From the NCBI GenBank assembly GCA_937625935.1, contig OW569371.1, forward strand, positions 372,001 through 436,000: a DNA stretch of 64,000 bases. The letters are read 5' to 3'. Below the pieces are notes generated by a model. That model was given only the letters and a program-made list of their open reading frames with translations, had not been told where the DNA came from and did no database searches. The stretch is from Tetramitus jugosus (lineage: Eukaryota > Protista > Heterolobosea). A program made the position numbers and the translations under genes. Shown here one piece after another: positions 25,441 through 27,381 of the stretch; position 1 is the stretch's first letter, and each line of letters opens with the position of its first letter.

Positions 25441-25513
25441 TAGCAATTCCAGGTATCGATCCTGGGACCTACGGGTTATGAGCCCGTCGCGCTAACCGCT
25501 GCGCCAAATTGCT
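25441..25513 (-). tRNA. Initiator tRNA-Met (CAT)
   Basis: 73-nt cloverleaf AGCAATT...AATTGCTA with an A1:U72 pair, three G:C pairs in the anticodon stem, T-loop ATCGATA (A54/A60) and TTTT shortly downstream. Confidence 0.97.
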
Positions 25514-25542
25514 TGGTGATAGTTTCTTGATAAGGACCTTTG

Positions 25543-25557
25543 GTCACTCTCGAAATT
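25543..25557 (+). repeat. Left target-site duplication GTCACTCTCGAAATT
   Basis: Identical 15-mer at 26877-26891. Confidence 0.93.
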
Positions 25558-26876
25558 TAAAAAAAAACGCAGAAAAAACGGAATCACATGTCTGGTGATT
25601 CAACAAATTTGGTGAAGGAATACGGCAACAGCCGTTATGCAGTGTGGACCACTGCACGGAAAGGCACGAGGCCAAGTGACAGAGAGGTCGTCATTACTGG
25701 CAACGGTAATGGCGTCTCTCAGTCATCTTTGGCAAGAAAGATTGGAGAGGAGTTTGGTGACTGGCTCAACCGAGTCCAAGTCATCAAGAGGAAAGGCCAG
25801 CAACGCTTTGTTGCATGGGTGACGGTCAAGGGTGACCGCATCTATGACTTTGTTGATTTGTTCAACAAGCAAAGGAGGATTGGCAATAGCACTGCTGCAC
25901 CCAAGCGCAGTGTTGATTGCACAAGAAAGGTGGTCGTCCATGGCATGAAGAACATGTCAGTGGACGACATCAAGAAGCTACTGGGACCTGAAAAGGTCGC
26001 CAGTGTGCTCAAGAAGCGTGACACTGCTTTCGTGGTCATGGGTGATGAAACCTATGCACAAGCAGTGCTCACCGGAGAGAACAAGGTAAAGGCCACGGTC
26101 ACTCGATACGTCGAGAGACCACATGATCCTCTCAAGGCCGTCAACAAGAGGTTGACAAAGATGTACGAGGAGCTGCTGACGGTGGTTGACGCACTGCGTC
26201 GACAGGTCACAGAACTCACCAAGGAATTGGCAAAGACAAAGTGCCAAGAGGGCAACAAACCGGTTCCGATACCGGAACAAGAAGTTGCACAAAGAACTGC
26301 TCCTGGTTTGATGGAGACAGAAGAACAAAGGAGTGCAACACCACTGCCAACAGTGCCTGTTGCACAGCTCAGCGCTGAAAATCAGCAAATCCTGGAGCAA
26401 GTGAATGCCACTTCTCCAGTGTTTGCTAGAGCGAAGAAGGAAATTGCTGCATTGGCACTAGCCAGTGCACGCAAAAGGTATGGTTTGACTGAGGACGAAC
26501 CAGTCATTGTGGATGTGGACGACGACTCCGAAAAGGAGATTCAAAGTCCACAACTCAACGACAACAAGAAGAGGAGTGCTAGGATCACACTGGGTGATCT
26601 GAGGAGCAACAAGGCCCAAAACAAGAAAACAACAACAGATGGCTCTGTGTCCATCGGCGGTCCTACTACAAGGTTACGCTCTTTGATGAAGGGCATCAAT
26701 CAAAACACTCACCTGAGTGATTCTTCCAACCTGTAGGTGCACCGTCGGGGACAACAAGAGAAGAAGAGTGAGCGACGCCCTACGGGTCGTCACTCACAAA
26801 ACAAGTCAATAAATGAGCAATCGTGTGCTTGCGCACACTTGGTTGTATGGAACAAAAAAAAAAAACAAAAAAAAAA
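25558..26876 (+). mobile_element. Non-autonomous, poly(A)-tailed, ORF1-only retroelement inserted 44 bp upstream of tRNA-iMet
   Basis: 15-bp TSD, A12-C-A10 tail at 26854-26876, AATAAA at 26808, single intronless ORF; the empty site is preserved in the flank of the paralogous tRNA at 27309. Confidence 0.88.
25588..26736 (+). CDS. LINE ORF1-like protein: two RRM-like domains, coiled coil, disordered basic tail
   Basis: REVVITG...RFVAWVTV and RKVVVHGM...SVDDIKKLL...DTAFVVM..ETYAQAVL fit the RNP2/RNP1 pattern; heptads LTKMYEELLTVVDALRRQVTELTKELAK. Confidence 0.7.
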   Translation: MSGDSTNLVKEYGNSRYAVWTTARKGTRPSDREVVITGNGNGVSQSSLARKIGEEFGDWLNRVQVIKRKGQQRFVAWVTVKGDRIYDFVDLFNKQRRIGNSTAAPKRSVDCTRKVVVHGMKNMSVDDIKKLLGPEKVASVLKKRDTAFVVMGDETYAQAVLTGENKVKATVTRYVERPHDPLKAVNKRLTKMYEELLTVVDALRRQVTELTKELAKTKCQEGNKPVPIPEQEVAQRTAPGLMETEEQRSATPLPTVPVAQLSAENQQILEQVNATSPVFARAKKEIAALALASARKRYGLTEDEPVIVDVDDDSEKEIQSPQLNDNKKRSARITLGDLRSNKAQNKKTTTDGSVSIGGPTTRLRSLMKGINQNTHLSDSSNL

Positions 26877-26891
26877 GTCACTCTCGAAATT
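26877..26891 (+). repeat. Right target-site duplication GTCACTCTCGAAATT
   Basis: Immediately follows the poly(A) tail. Confidence 0.93.
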
Positions 26892-27308
26892 GAACAAATT
26901 TTTTGTATTTCGTAGTGTCGGAGTTGTTCTTCTTTACTCCAAGACTACAGCAACAAACAAGTGAAAGGACCCAATGTATGGTTAAGATTTATTTGATCGA
27001 ATAATAAGCATTAATGGGCTGGTTTCGATCAACAAGTAGAATTGATTGACTTGAACGATAACACAATTGTGGGACGAACTCTTCCAATTTTTGGAAGAAG
27101 TGCACGTGAATGCCTCGAACTAAGATTTCGAAAGAGGATACACCAAGGTTAACAGGTAACGCCTTTCTTTTGGGAGACAATCAAGGAGATAAGGCTATCC
27201 AAGAATTGAGTTACGGGTGTTTCATCTCATAACTCCGATTCTTCGCAATACAAAAAATTTGTTCAATTTCGAGAGTGACCAAAGGTCCTTATCAAGGAAC
27301 TATCACCA

Positions 27309-27381
27309 AGCAATTTGGCGCAGCGGTTAGCGCGACGGGCTCATAACCCGTAGGTCCCAGGATCGATACCTGGAATTGCTA
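27309..27381 (+). tRNA. Initiator tRNA-Met (CAT), identical inverted copy
   Basis: Exact reverse complement of 25441-25513; TTTT about 12 nt downstream. Confidence 0.97.

What the first reader, a model, noticed from the sequence alone, without database searches (positions are those of the whole stretch)
25543..26891. tRNA-gene-targeted, RT-less, ORF1-only retroelement (candidate new system)
Seen: a 1319-bp unit with a 30-nt leader, one intact intronless 382-aa ORF, a structured 3' UTR, AATAAA and an A12CA10 tail, bounded by a perfect 15-bp TSD at positions -30 to -44 of tRNA-iMet, with its 5' end facing the tRNA. The target (CTTTG/GTCAC) is not the L1 TT/AAAA consensus. Known: TSD plus poly(A) is the signature of target-primed reverse transcription; Dictyostelium TRE5-A inserts about 48 bp upstream of tRNA genes in this orientation through ORF1p-TFIIIB contact, and TRE5-A.2 and mammalian HAL1 keep ORF1 but lack a functional RT. 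Inference: a young non-autonomous element that supplies its own RNA-binding/targeting protein and borrows RT in trans, in a lineage that appears not to be dictyostelid. That would be another origin of tRNA safe-harbour targeting. One insertion cannot prove targeting.
Basis: partly seen in the sequence, partly recalled or inferred. Interest (0 to 1): 0.92.

Follow-up and report, generated by a model that had tools for sequence, protein, structure and literature searches.

The report
RT-less retroelement targeting tRNA genes
This is one young copy of an abundant jumping gene in an amoeba that lands a fixed ~30-45 bases in front of tRNA and 5S rRNA genes, carries only an RNA-binding protein gene, and must borrow its copying enzyme from larger relatives, closely mirroring, probably independently, the TRE5 elements of Dictyostelium.

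Summary
The unit is 1319 bp (25558-26876), with a 30-nt leader, an intact 382-aa ORF, AATAAA, an A12CA10 tail and a perfect 15-bp TSD at -30 to -44 of tRNA-iMet, head-to-head.

- **Real family.** There are at least 40 near-full-length DNA copies and at least 35 intact ORFs in the 26-Mb genome.
- **Targeting.** Of 30 copies examined, 19 abut a tRNA gene of many isotypes and 3 abut 5S rRNA genes, always in the same orientation. Seven are pushed outward by later insertions and one is unresolved.
- **Nick position.** The first-strand nick maps 27-31 bp upstream of mature tRNA 5' ends and 24-25 bp upstream of 5S +1.
- **No RT.** The element has none. Co-resident autonomous relatives (ORF1 + APE-RT-zinc-finger ORF2) occupy the same sites. 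They share its 5' A(n)CGC start and a terminal GCAAY...GUUGU hairpin, and their ORF1 is 30% identical.
- **The protein.** It models as tandem RRM-like domains plus a coiled coil, and dN/dS is about 0.27.
- **Second family.** A 1.39-kb ORF1-only family (414 aa, 50% identical) behaves the same way.

Verdict: a TRE5-like, Pol III-complex-guided non-LTR lineage with persistent ORF1-only parasites. I found no description of it in the literature I searched. Whether ORF1p does the targeting is unproven. First readers had noted two other copies in this genome without follow-up.

The parts
25441..25513 (-). Target gene: tRNA-Met(CAT), initiator-type, intact; its 5' end faces the element
   Evidence: ARAGORN. 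It is identical to the second copy at 27309-27381.
25543..25557 (.). Left copy of the target-site duplication (GTCACTCTCGAAATT), at positions -30 to -44 of the tRNA
25558..26876 (+). Whole ORF1-only non-autonomous non-LTR retroelement (family A), 1319 bp
   Evidence: At least 40 copies at 90-100% identity.
25558..25587 (+). 5' leader, starting with A-run + CGC. The same terminal motif occurs in family B and in the autonomous relatives.
25588..26736 (+). ORF1, 382 aa: two RRM-like alpha/beta domains (residues 10-95 and 102-161), a long helix (181-221), helices at 258-298 and a disordered basic tail
   Evidence: AF2 model (pLDDT >90 over residues 10-160). RRM matches at Z 8-9, and tandem-RRM matches. 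dN/dS 0.27.
26768..26797 (+). 3' UTR stem-loop 1. A hairpin sits at the same position, with a different sequence, in family B and in the autonomous relatives.
26808..26813 (+). AATAAA polyadenylation signal
   Evidence: Present in all 32 distinct 3' ends.
26817..26846 (+). Terminal hairpin GCAAUC-GUGUGC-UUGC-GCACAC-UU-GGUUGU. Its GCAAY/GUUGU base is shared by every family; candidate ORF2p recognition element.
26847..26876 (+). ATGGAAC followed by the A12-C-A10 tail
26877..26891 (.). Right copy of the target-site duplication
27231..27381 (+). Paralogous unoccupied site: the second tRNA-iMet (27309-27381) plus 78 bp upstream, holding a single copy of the 15-mer at 27265-27279

Best explanation
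This is a recent insertion of a non-autonomous non-LTR (LINE-type) retrotransposon family that I call family A.

- **What it encodes.** Its RNA is about 1.3 kb and polyadenylated. It encodes only an ORF1 protein, modelled as tandem RRM-like domains plus a coiled coil.
- **Proposed role of the protein (inferred).** The protein coats its own RNA.
- **Where the enzyme comes from (inferred).** The RNA is reverse-transcribed and integrated by ORF2p (APE endonuclease, RT, CCHC) supplied in trans by autonomous relatives in the same genome. ORF2p would recognise the shared 3' end: AAUAAA, a GCAAY...GUUGU hairpin, AU(GG/U) and poly(A).
- **How it integrates.** Integration is by target-primed reverse transcription, positioned by the Pol III pre-initiation complex rather than by DNA sequence. 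[quoted passage not shown] The second nick falls 12-17 bp further out. The element's 5' end therefore always faces the Pol III gene, and the gene is left intact.

**Shown:** family structure, TSDs, position and orientation at tRNA and 5S genes, absence of RT, existence of intact autonomous relatives with shared termini at the same sites, and purifying selection on ORF1.

**Inferred:** trans-mobilisation, hairpin recognition, tethering to TFIIIB, and which protein does the tethering.
For: **Copies and placement**
- At least 40 copies, and at least 35 intact 382-388-aa ORFs.
- 19 of 30 copies abut tRNA genes of at least 10 isotypes, with 35-48 bp between the element's 5' end and the tRNA 5' end. 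All are head-to-head, each with a distinct TSD of about 12-17 bp.
- 3 of 30 abut 5S rRNA genes at 37-43 bp.
- 7 of 30 sit directly behind the poly(A) tail of another element that lies between them and the Pol III gene. L046, L047, L048 and L021 were checked directly.
- The tRNA-proximal TSD edge lies at -27 to -31 in 16 of 17 tRNA cases and at -24 or -25 in 3 of 3 5S cases.
- TSD sequences share no motif.

**Autonomous relatives**
- The element in L046 has a 341-aa ORF1 that is 30% identical to the window ORF (E = 5e-28).
- Its 1284-aa ORF2 has APE hallmarks (SDH), YVDD and CCHC, a perfect 12-bp TSD and a poly(A) tail.
- It sits about 45 bp upstream of an intron-containing tRNA.
- 5'-truncated autonomous copies sit about 50 bp upstream of tRNA-Trp and tRNA-Leu.

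**Shared 3' end**
- All 32 distinct 3' ends from families A and B and at least 5 autonomous types share AATAAA, then GCAAY, a loop, GTTGT, AT and A(n). The sixth pair varies as C:G, A:T or T:A.
- The two-hairpin 3' UTR is kept although its sequence differs.

**Selection and spread**
- dN/dS is 0.27. It is 0.25 for variants shared between copies and 0.53 for singletons.
- Metagenome contigs from relatives show the same tRNA arrangement.
- Contigs from an oligo-dT metatranscriptome and from soil metatranscriptomes cover the element body only.
Against: - No retrotransposition, RNA binding or protein contact has been measured.
- The nearest autonomous ORF1 in the material I could read is only 30% identical, so the actual ORF2p donor family is not identified. 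The ATGG-tail pairing is only suggestive.
- The expression evidence comes from assembled contigs of RNA libraries, which can contain DNA.
The census covers 30 family-A loci plus coordinates only, not every copy or every tRNA gene.
- I did not independently verify the host's taxonomy.
Confidence: 0.85

Rival explanations
1. The element and its life cycle are as described, but targeting to Pol III genes is done entirely by the borrowed ORF2p or its endonuclease. On this reading the element's own ORF1p only packages or chaperones the RNA and has no role in choosing the site.
For: - Autonomous relatives whose ORF1 is only 30% identical land at the same position.
- Whatever is shared in trans is therefore sufficient to explain a common site.
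- The fold of ORF1p suggests RNA binding, not a known TFIIIB-binding module.
Against: - In the one studied analogue, TRE5-A, ORF1p is the protein that contacts TBP, Brf1 and Bdp1 (PMC5911963, PMC5633606).
- The N-terminal 200 residues of ORF1 are the part conserved between the ORF1-only and autonomous families.
- A distantly related LINE (the L049/L056 type) has a highly divergent ORF1 and is not at tRNA genes.
Confidence: 0.4
2. The 1.3-kb units are dead-on-arrival deletion products of an autonomous LINE. Their ORF is irrelevant and they spread, or merely accumulate, passively.
For: Deletion derivatives such as TRE5-A.2 exist in Dictyostelium (PMC5633606). 5'-truncated and internally deleted copies also occur here.
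Against: - At least 40 copies have uniform length and a uniform 5' end.
- 24 of 30 ORFs are intact even at 5-7% DNA divergence.
- dN/dS is 0.27.
- There are subfamilies with in-frame length variants of 382 versus 386-388 aa.
- A second ORF1-only family is 50% identical, and a 39% relative occurs in a metagenome.
- No autonomous element with a closely similar ORF1 was found.
Confidence: 0.07
3. The locus is a processed retrogene of an ordinary host gene that happened to land near a tRNA gene.
For: Poly(A) tail, TSD and an intronless ORF, seen at one locus.
Against: - Dozens of copies with independent TSDs.
- A conserved 5' terminus.
- No intron-bearing parent gene among the hits.
- Homologous ORF1 upstream of APE-RT ORF2 in autonomous elements.
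Confidence: 0.01
4. Insertion is random and the tRNA association reflects survival of harmless insertions only, that is, selection rather than targeting.
For: The genome is compact and gene-dense, so selection against most insertions is expected.
Against: - The window for the first nick is 5 bp wide.
- Orientation is strict.
- The same spacing from the transcription start holds at both tRNA and 5S genes.
- Very young copies (at least 99.2% identical, with identical proteins) are already all at Pol III genes.
Confidence: 0.02

Closest known systems
TRE5-A / TRE5 elements of Dictyostelium discoideum (non-LTR, APE-RT-ZF ORF2)
   Same: - Integration about 40-54 bp upstream of mature tRNA coding sequences, in the opposite transcriptional orientation, and 37-41 bp upstream of 5S rRNA genes (PMC5911963, Table 1 and text). 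Here the figures are 35-48 bp at tRNA genes and 37-43 bp at 5S genes, head-to-head.
- Two-ORF autonomous form with APE, RT and zinc finger.
- Oligo(A) tail and TSDs.
- Repeated hits at the same tRNA gene.
   Different: - The host appears to be a different eukaryotic supergroup. I did not verify this.
- The ORF1 proteins show no detectable similarity to anything outside this lineage.
- ORF1 and ORF2 overlap as ATGA stop/start, where TRE5-A uses a -1 frameshift.
- There are no A/B/C modules. Instead there is a short A(n)CGC leader and a terminal hairpin.
- RT relatedness to TRE5 was not tested.
TRE5-A.2 (non-autonomous TRE5-A lacking ORF2, mobilised in trans by TRE5-A.1 ORF2p)
   Same: It keeps ORF1 and the termini, lacks RT, and integrates at the authentic tRNA-upstream position using ORF2p from the autonomous form (PMC5633606).
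   Different: - TRE5-A.2 is a variant of TRE5-A that lacks the ORF2 sequence.
- Here the ORF1-only elements are old, diversified lineages: families A and B are 50% identical to each other and 30% or less identical to the autonomous ORF1s.
- They are under purifying selection.
- Among the genomic matches listed they outnumber the autonomous copies: at least 35 intact family-A and at least 20 intact family-B ORFs, against roughly 15 ORF2 reading frames of 1,100 aa or more.
HAL1 (half-L1) of mammals and HeT-A of Drosophila telomeres (statements on these two rest on my own knowledge)
   Same: Both are non-LTR elements that encode only the ORF1/Gag protein and depend on an RT supplied in trans. HeT-A is in addition site-specific, and its Gag contributes to finding the target.
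   Different: Different LINE clades, different hosts and different targets (dispersed sites or telomeres). Neither is aimed at Pol III genes.
NLTR-B of Polysphondylium pallidum; Ty3 and DGLT-A LTR elements
   Same: These are independent inventions of integration just upstream of tRNA genes. NLTR-B inserts at 39-64 bp. Ty3 uses TFIIIB (PMC5006619, PMC5911963).
   Different: NLTR-B has an RNase H domain and three ORFs. Ty3 and DGLT-A use integrase and land at 1-33 bp.

Membership tests
APE-type non-LTR (LINE-like) retrotransposon superfamily | Insertions end in poly(A) or a 3' tail and are flanked by variable target-site duplications; 5' truncation occurs | tested here: met
   TSDs of about 12-17 bp were found in 24 of 28 family-A copies, with A-rich tails. 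5'-truncated autonomous copies occur in L047 and L048.
APE-type non-LTR (LINE-like) retrotransposon superfamily | Autonomous members encode ORF2 with an APE endonuclease and a reverse transcriptase | tested here: met
   L046 ORF2 matches RVT_1 at 3e-25 and Exo_endo_phos_2 weakly, and carries SDH, YVDD and CCHC motifs. The window element itself has no such ORF.
TRE5 family (dictyostelid tRNA-gene-targeted retroelements) | Integration about 40-54 bp upstream of tRNA genes in opposite orientation; also upstream of 5S genes | tested here: met
   compared with PMC5911963.
TRE5 family (dictyostelid tRNA-gene-targeted retroelements) | RT domain groups phylogenetically with the TRE/L1-clade elements of dictyostelids | not tested
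By sequence, the best solved-structure matches of the RT are R2 enzymes (5e-20), and human L1 ORF2p was not matched. This is suggestive only.
TRE5 family (dictyostelid tRNA-gene-targeted retroelements) | ORF2 translated through a -1 frameshift; modular A/B/C untranslated regions | tested here: not met
   ORF1 and ORF2 overlap as ATGA in L046. The leader is 17-30 nt, and the 3' UTR is two hairpins.
TRE5 family (dictyostelid tRNA-gene-targeted retroelements) | ORF1p binds TFIIIB subunits (TBP, Brf1, Bdp1) | not testable with these tools
No binding claim is made.
ORF1-only non-autonomous LINE derivatives (HAL1 / TRE5-A.2 / HeT-A type) | Retains an intact, selected ORF1 and LINE termini; lacks EN/RT; multiplies | tested here: met
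SINE | Short, non-coding, with an internal Pol III promoter | tested here: not met
   The element is 1.3 kb, 87% of it coding, with AATAAA and a poly(A) tail.
Processed retrogene | One or few copies derived from a host parent gene | tested here: not met
   At least 40 copies with a common terminus, and no parent gene.
RRM-containing LINE ORF1 proteins | RRM fold in ORF1p | tested here: inconclusive
   - The AF2 model has pLDDT >90 over residues 10-160, from a 21-sequence alignment.
- Nearly all top structural matches are RRMs, at Z 7-9, and tandem RRMs appear in Foldseek at E about 1e-3.
- There is no Pfam hit, and Z under 8-9 is not decisive.

The most novel reading that the evidence does not exclude
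An amoeba lineage unrelated to Dictyostelium has independently evolved LINE integration measured from the Pol III initiation complex: first nick about 24 bp upstream of the transcription start, with the same orientation and spacing as TRE5. Within that lineage a protein-coding parasite of the parasite has persisted and diversified: ORF1-only families that keep their own selected RNA-binding protein, which may also serve as the targeting protein, steal ORF2p through a shared terminal hairpin, and outnumber their autonomous providers.
Probability: 0.45. Interest if true: 0.8.

Novelty: new variant of a known kind. Interest (0 to 1): 0.66.

Why it matters
The review I read (PMC5911963, Table 1) lists Pol III-gene targeting only for yeasts (LTR elements) and dictyostelids. 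My full-text searches for tRNA-targeted non-LTR elements in Naegleria, Acrasis or Heterolobosea found nothing.

- **A comparison for TRE5-A.** A second, apparently independent non-LTR system with nearly the same geometry offers one. It argues that the upstream edge of TFIIIB-bound DNA is a general solution for safe integration in compact genomes.
- **Mechanism becomes testable.** The tight nick position (5-bp spread, same distance from the start site at tRNA and 5S genes) makes it possible to test how target-primed reverse transcription is tethered.
- **Small parts.** The system is unusually compact: a 1.3-kb element, a 382-aa protein and a roughly 30-nt terminal hairpin. That suits reconstitution, and possibly the engineering of safe-harbour insertion.
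- **Evolutionary interest.** ORF1-only lineages are rare outside HAL1 and HeT-A. Ones that persist under selection are informative about cis-preference and about parasitism between transposons.

Tried and rejected
- **Pfam on the 382-aa ORF:** nothing significant.
- **PDB sequence search on the ORF:** nothing.
- **Protein atlas:** only weak leads for ORF1 (scores 0.75-0.77) and generic APE-RT clusters for ORF2.
- **Word-indexed homologue search with ORF2:** only 24-28% matches, so no clade assignment.
- **Search of 1.84 billion representatives with an ORF1 profile:** 35 hits, mostly metagenome fragments and none named.
- **Host identification through a neighbouring mitochondrial-carrier gene:** the best matches were unnamed, and neither dictyostelid nor Naegleria proteins appeared among the top 120. 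This was not informative.
- **Fetching autonomous elements, family-B copies and further family-A copies:** I did not try another route and used coordinates only.
- **Whole-genome tRNA list:** only 63 of about 1600 candidates were scored, so I could not compute the fraction of occupied tRNA genes.
- **An A-type ORF1 fused to an ORF2:** cross-checking the coordinates of RT and ORF1 hits shows only tandem pile-ups, and three were verified at sequence level.
- **Complex prediction:** none was sent, because no TFIIIB sequence was available and I make no binding claim.
Full report
**1. The observation**

- The 15-mer GTCACTCTCGAAATT occurs at 25543-25557 and at 26877-26891.
- It brackets a 1319-bp unit (25558-26876) that begins TAAAAAAAAACGCAG.
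- The unit has an ATG at 25588 and one uninterrupted 382-codon ORF ending at 26736.
- AATAAA lies at 26808-26813 and the A12-C-A10 tail at 26854-26876.

ARAGORN places tRNA-Met(CAT) at 25441-25513 on the minus strand. The duplication therefore covers -30 to -44 of the tRNA and the element's 5' end faces it.

A second, identical tRNA-iMet at 27309-27381 provides an internal control.
- Its 78 bp of upstream sequence is 94% identical to the site with the element and one TSD copy removed.
- It contains the 15-mer once, at 27265-27279.
- The duplication was therefore created by the insertion.

**2. It is a family, and it is targeted**

A DNA search of the window's own 26.35-Mb, 56-contig assembly found at least 40 near-full-length copies at 90-100% identity, plus fragments. 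A protein search found at least 35 intact ORFs of 382-388 aa.

I oriented the 30 best loci and looked at their flanks.
- 19 of 30 have a tRNA gene on the opposite strand, with 35-48 bp between the tRNA 5' end and the element's 5' end.
  - The isotypes are Met, Val, Lys, Asp, Gln, Arg, Gly, Asn, Thr and Ser.
  - The count includes L009, whose neighbour is only a partial tRNA match (33 bits) about 50 bp away.
  - It also includes L028, an internally deleted copy assigned by its TSD position.
- 3 of 30 (L004, L014, L027) have a 5S rRNA gene (93-100 bits in Rfam) in the same arrangement, at 37-43 bp.
- 7 of 30 lie directly behind the poly(A) tail of another element that sits between them and the Pol III gene.
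- 1 of 30 (L030) is 5'-truncated and unresolved.

TSDs of about 12-17 bp, all different, were found in 24 of 28 copies. They show no shared motif.

The tRNA-proximal edge of the TSD marks the first-strand nick.
- It lies at -27 to -31 (mode -29/-30) in 16 of 17 tRNA cases.
- It lies at -24 or -25 of 5S +1 in all three 5S cases.
- A pre-tRNA leader of about 5 nt would make these the same distance from the Pol III start site. That step is my inference.

The narrow window, the strict orientation and the inclusion of 5S genes point to recognition of the Pol III initiation complex. They do not fit recognition of a DNA sequence, and they do not fit post-insertion selection.

**3. No RT here, but partners exist**

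The window ORF has no Pfam match, and the element has no room for a second ORF.

The genome holds many RVT_1 hits with open frames of 1100-1330 aa. I read one full autonomous element in L046 (minus strand).
- Its 5' end is AAAAAAAACGCGAGCAC-ATG.
- ORF1 is 341 aa. ORF2 is 1284 aa and overlaps it as ATGA.
- ORF2 carries APE hallmarks (SDH at residue 224), YVDD at 713 and a CCHC-like motif at 1146.
- Its 3' end is AATAAAGAG-GCAACAATTGTTGT-ATGG-A(24).
- It has a perfect 12-bp TSD.
- It sits about 45 bp upstream of an intron-containing tRNA (Rfam), between that tRNA and an older family-A copy.
- Its ORF1 is 30% identical to the window ORF over 209 residues (E = 5e-28).

Other evidence that autonomous relatives use the same sites:
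- 5'-truncated autonomous copies lie about 50 bp upstream of tRNA-Trp (L047) and tRNA-Leu (L048).
- By coordinates, another autonomous family lies next to a tRNA on contig C18, and a family-B copy next to a tRNA on contig C9, both head-to-head.

No family-A-type ORF1 was found joined to an ORF2. Wherever RT and family-A hits are close together, the geometry fits tandem pile-ups (three verified by sequence).

**4. Shared ends**

I compared 32 distinct 3' ends found in my loci. They come from families A and B and at least five autonomous types.
- All read AATAAA, then 2-6 nt, GCAAY, a loop or extra stem, GTTGT, AT(GG/T) and A(n).
- The sixth pair of the stem is C:G in 20, G:T in 3, A:T in 3 and T:A in 1.
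- In the two ORF1-only families the hairpin is lengthened by a further 6-7 bp.
- A second hairpin upstream of AATAAA is present in family A, family B and two autonomous types, with unrelated sequences.
- All families start with an A-run followed by CGC.

Shared termini of this kind are what a non-autonomous element needs in order to be recognised by a partner's ORF2p. That recognition is inferred, not shown. Family A shares the ATGG tail variant with the L046 and L047 autonomous types, and family B shares the ATT variant with the L048 type. This is only a hint at who mobilises whom.

**5. The protein**

- **Structure.** An AF2 model built from a 21-sequence alignment is confident (pLDDT >90) for residues 10-160. 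It shows two alpha/beta domains (10-95 and 102-161), a 40-residue helix (181-221), two more helices (258-298) and a disordered basic C-terminus.
- **Fold.** Structure searches return almost only RRM domains, at Z 7-9 with 75-100 aligned residues. They also return tandem-RRM proteins (DND1, HuR, hnRNP A1) at Foldseek E about 1e-3. This fits an RNA-binding ORF1p, but the scores are moderate.
- **Selection.** Among 24 intact copies dN/dS is 0.27. Variants shared by several copies give 0.25 and singletons 0.53. The protein therefore mattered for propagation.
- **Distribution.** Sequence relatives are almost absent from public data: 5 proteins among 5.8 billion and 35 hits, mostly fragments, among 1.84 billion representatives. 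All come from metagenomes, including compost metagenome entries annotated only as hypothetical proteins.
- **Same arrangement elsewhere.** Two of those contigs show it too: tRNA-Asn 45 bp from a 96%-identical copy, and tRNA-Gln about 56 bp from a 39%-identical, 461-aa ORF1.

**6. A second ORF1-only family**

Family B has a 414-aa ORF that is about 50% identical to family A, with at least 20 intact copies.
- A complete copy in L021 is 1.39 kb.
- It has the A(n)CGC start, only this one ORF, two 3' hairpins, a poly(A) tail and a 13-bp TSD.
- It sits upstream of what looks, by eye, like the 5' part of a tRNA-Ser gene at the locus edge. No tool called that gene.

ORF1-only is therefore a lasting, diversified way of life in this lineage, not a one-off deletion.

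A more distant LINE (L049, and the metagenome contig L056) has a barely recognisable ORF1 homologue, no poly(A) tail and no hairpin, and is not next to a tRNA. It serves as an untargeted outgroup.

**7. Expression**

The element's words occur in an oligo-dT metatranscriptome and in several soil metatranscriptomes from independent studies.
- Their contigs, at 90-99% identity, tile 25573-26812 and none of the unique flanks.
- This is compatible with transcription. It is not proof, because contigs cannot show transcript ends and RNA libraries can carry DNA.
- One low-depth contig (run X7, record 25) joins the tRNA-proximal flank to the distal flank without the element. It may be an empty allele.

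**8. Comparison with what is known**

- **TRE5.** These elements insert 40-54 bp upstream of tRNA coding sequences in the opposite orientation, and 37-41 bp upstream of 5S genes. Their ORF1p binds TFIIIB subunits (PMC5911963).
- **TRE5-A.2.** It lacks ORF2 and is mobilised in trans (PMC5633606).
- **NLTR-B.** Spaller et al. describe it as an independent TRE5-like case within dictyostelids (PMC5006619).
- **Same here.** The integration geometry and the ORF1-only strategy.
- **Different here.** The ORF1 family, the ATGA ORF1/ORF2 junction, the short leader, the terminal hairpin, the age and abundance of the ORF1-only lineages, and apparently the host.
- **Host.** Earlier scan follow-ups call the organism a soil amoeba related to Naegleria and Acrasis. 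I could not confirm this. GC is about 42%, and no dictyostelid protein appeared among the matches of a housekeeping neighbour.
- **Membership in TRE5.** This would need an RT phylogeny, which I could not run. The RT's best solved-structure matches are R2 enzymes rather than L1 ORF2p, which is only a hint.
- **Literature.** Full-text searches found no report of tRNA-targeted non-LTR elements in Heterolobosea, Naegleria or Acrasis.

**9. Verdict**

- The reading of a tRNA-gene-targeted, RT-less, ORF1-only retroelement is supported, and widened to Pol III genes in general.
- The idea that ORF1p is the aiming device remains a hypothesis, at about 0.35-0.4. The rival is that the borrowed ORF2p does the aiming.
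- I class it as a new variant of a known kind.
- First readers flagged two other copies elsewhere in this genome (s1-550881, s1-547801), without follow-up.

**10. Limits**

The census therefore rests on 30 family-A loci, four 10-kb regions, metagenome contigs and coordinate tables.

Noticed in passing
L049:2740-8010 (minus strand) and metagenome contig L056: A different LINE family: ORF1 of 375 aa and ORF2 of 1324 aa (YADD), ending in AATAAAAGACTTTTTATA without a poly(A) tail, with a 17-bp TSD (TCCCCAAATTGCTGGAA), and not next to any tRNA. Its ORF1 is only about 13% identical to the window ORF.
   Followed up: partly
window 25441-25513 and 27309-27381: Two identical initiator tRNA-Met genes lie head-to-head 1.8 kb apart (about 480 bp before the insertion). 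About 78 bp of their upstream sequence is duplicated, but their downstream flanks are unrelated.
   Followed up: partly
G000 contigs C54 and C56: tRNA hits fall at identical coordinates on both contigs (941, 12773, 14364, 14438 and 44585). The two contigs look like duplicates of one sequence, possibly an organelle or an assembly redundancy.
   Followed up: no
G000:C16:366236, C28:223019, C15:386571, C30:32495 and others: A second class of RVT_1 hits matches only profile positions about 60-205, with open frames of 200-440 aa. These may be the DIRS-like tRNA-inserting elements noted by other readers of this genome.
   Followed up: no
L046:6826-6829 (minus strand): ORF1 stop and ORF2 start overlap as ATGA in the autonomous element, which suggests termination-reinitiation rather than frameshifting.
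   Followed up: partly
window 25493-25522 joined to 26884-26903, in run X7 (record 25): One low-depth contig from a soil RNA library appears to span the insertion site without the element, so it may be an empty allele in an environmental relative.
   Followed up: no
ORF1 residues about 313-335 (window 26524-26592): The motif EIQSPQLN-x2-KKRSARVT is conserved in the ORF1-only families A and B and in P0004 and P0005, but not in the autonomous ORF1 of L046. It lies in a region predicted to be disordered. It may be a nuclear localisation signal or a docking motif.
   Followed up: no
NCBI MND87640.1 / MND87641.1 (compost metagenome, 2920-bp contig): Family-A and family-B ORFs are adjacent on one public metagenome contig, annotated only as hypothetical proteins. 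This shows the same tandem pile-up outside this assembly.
   Followed up: no
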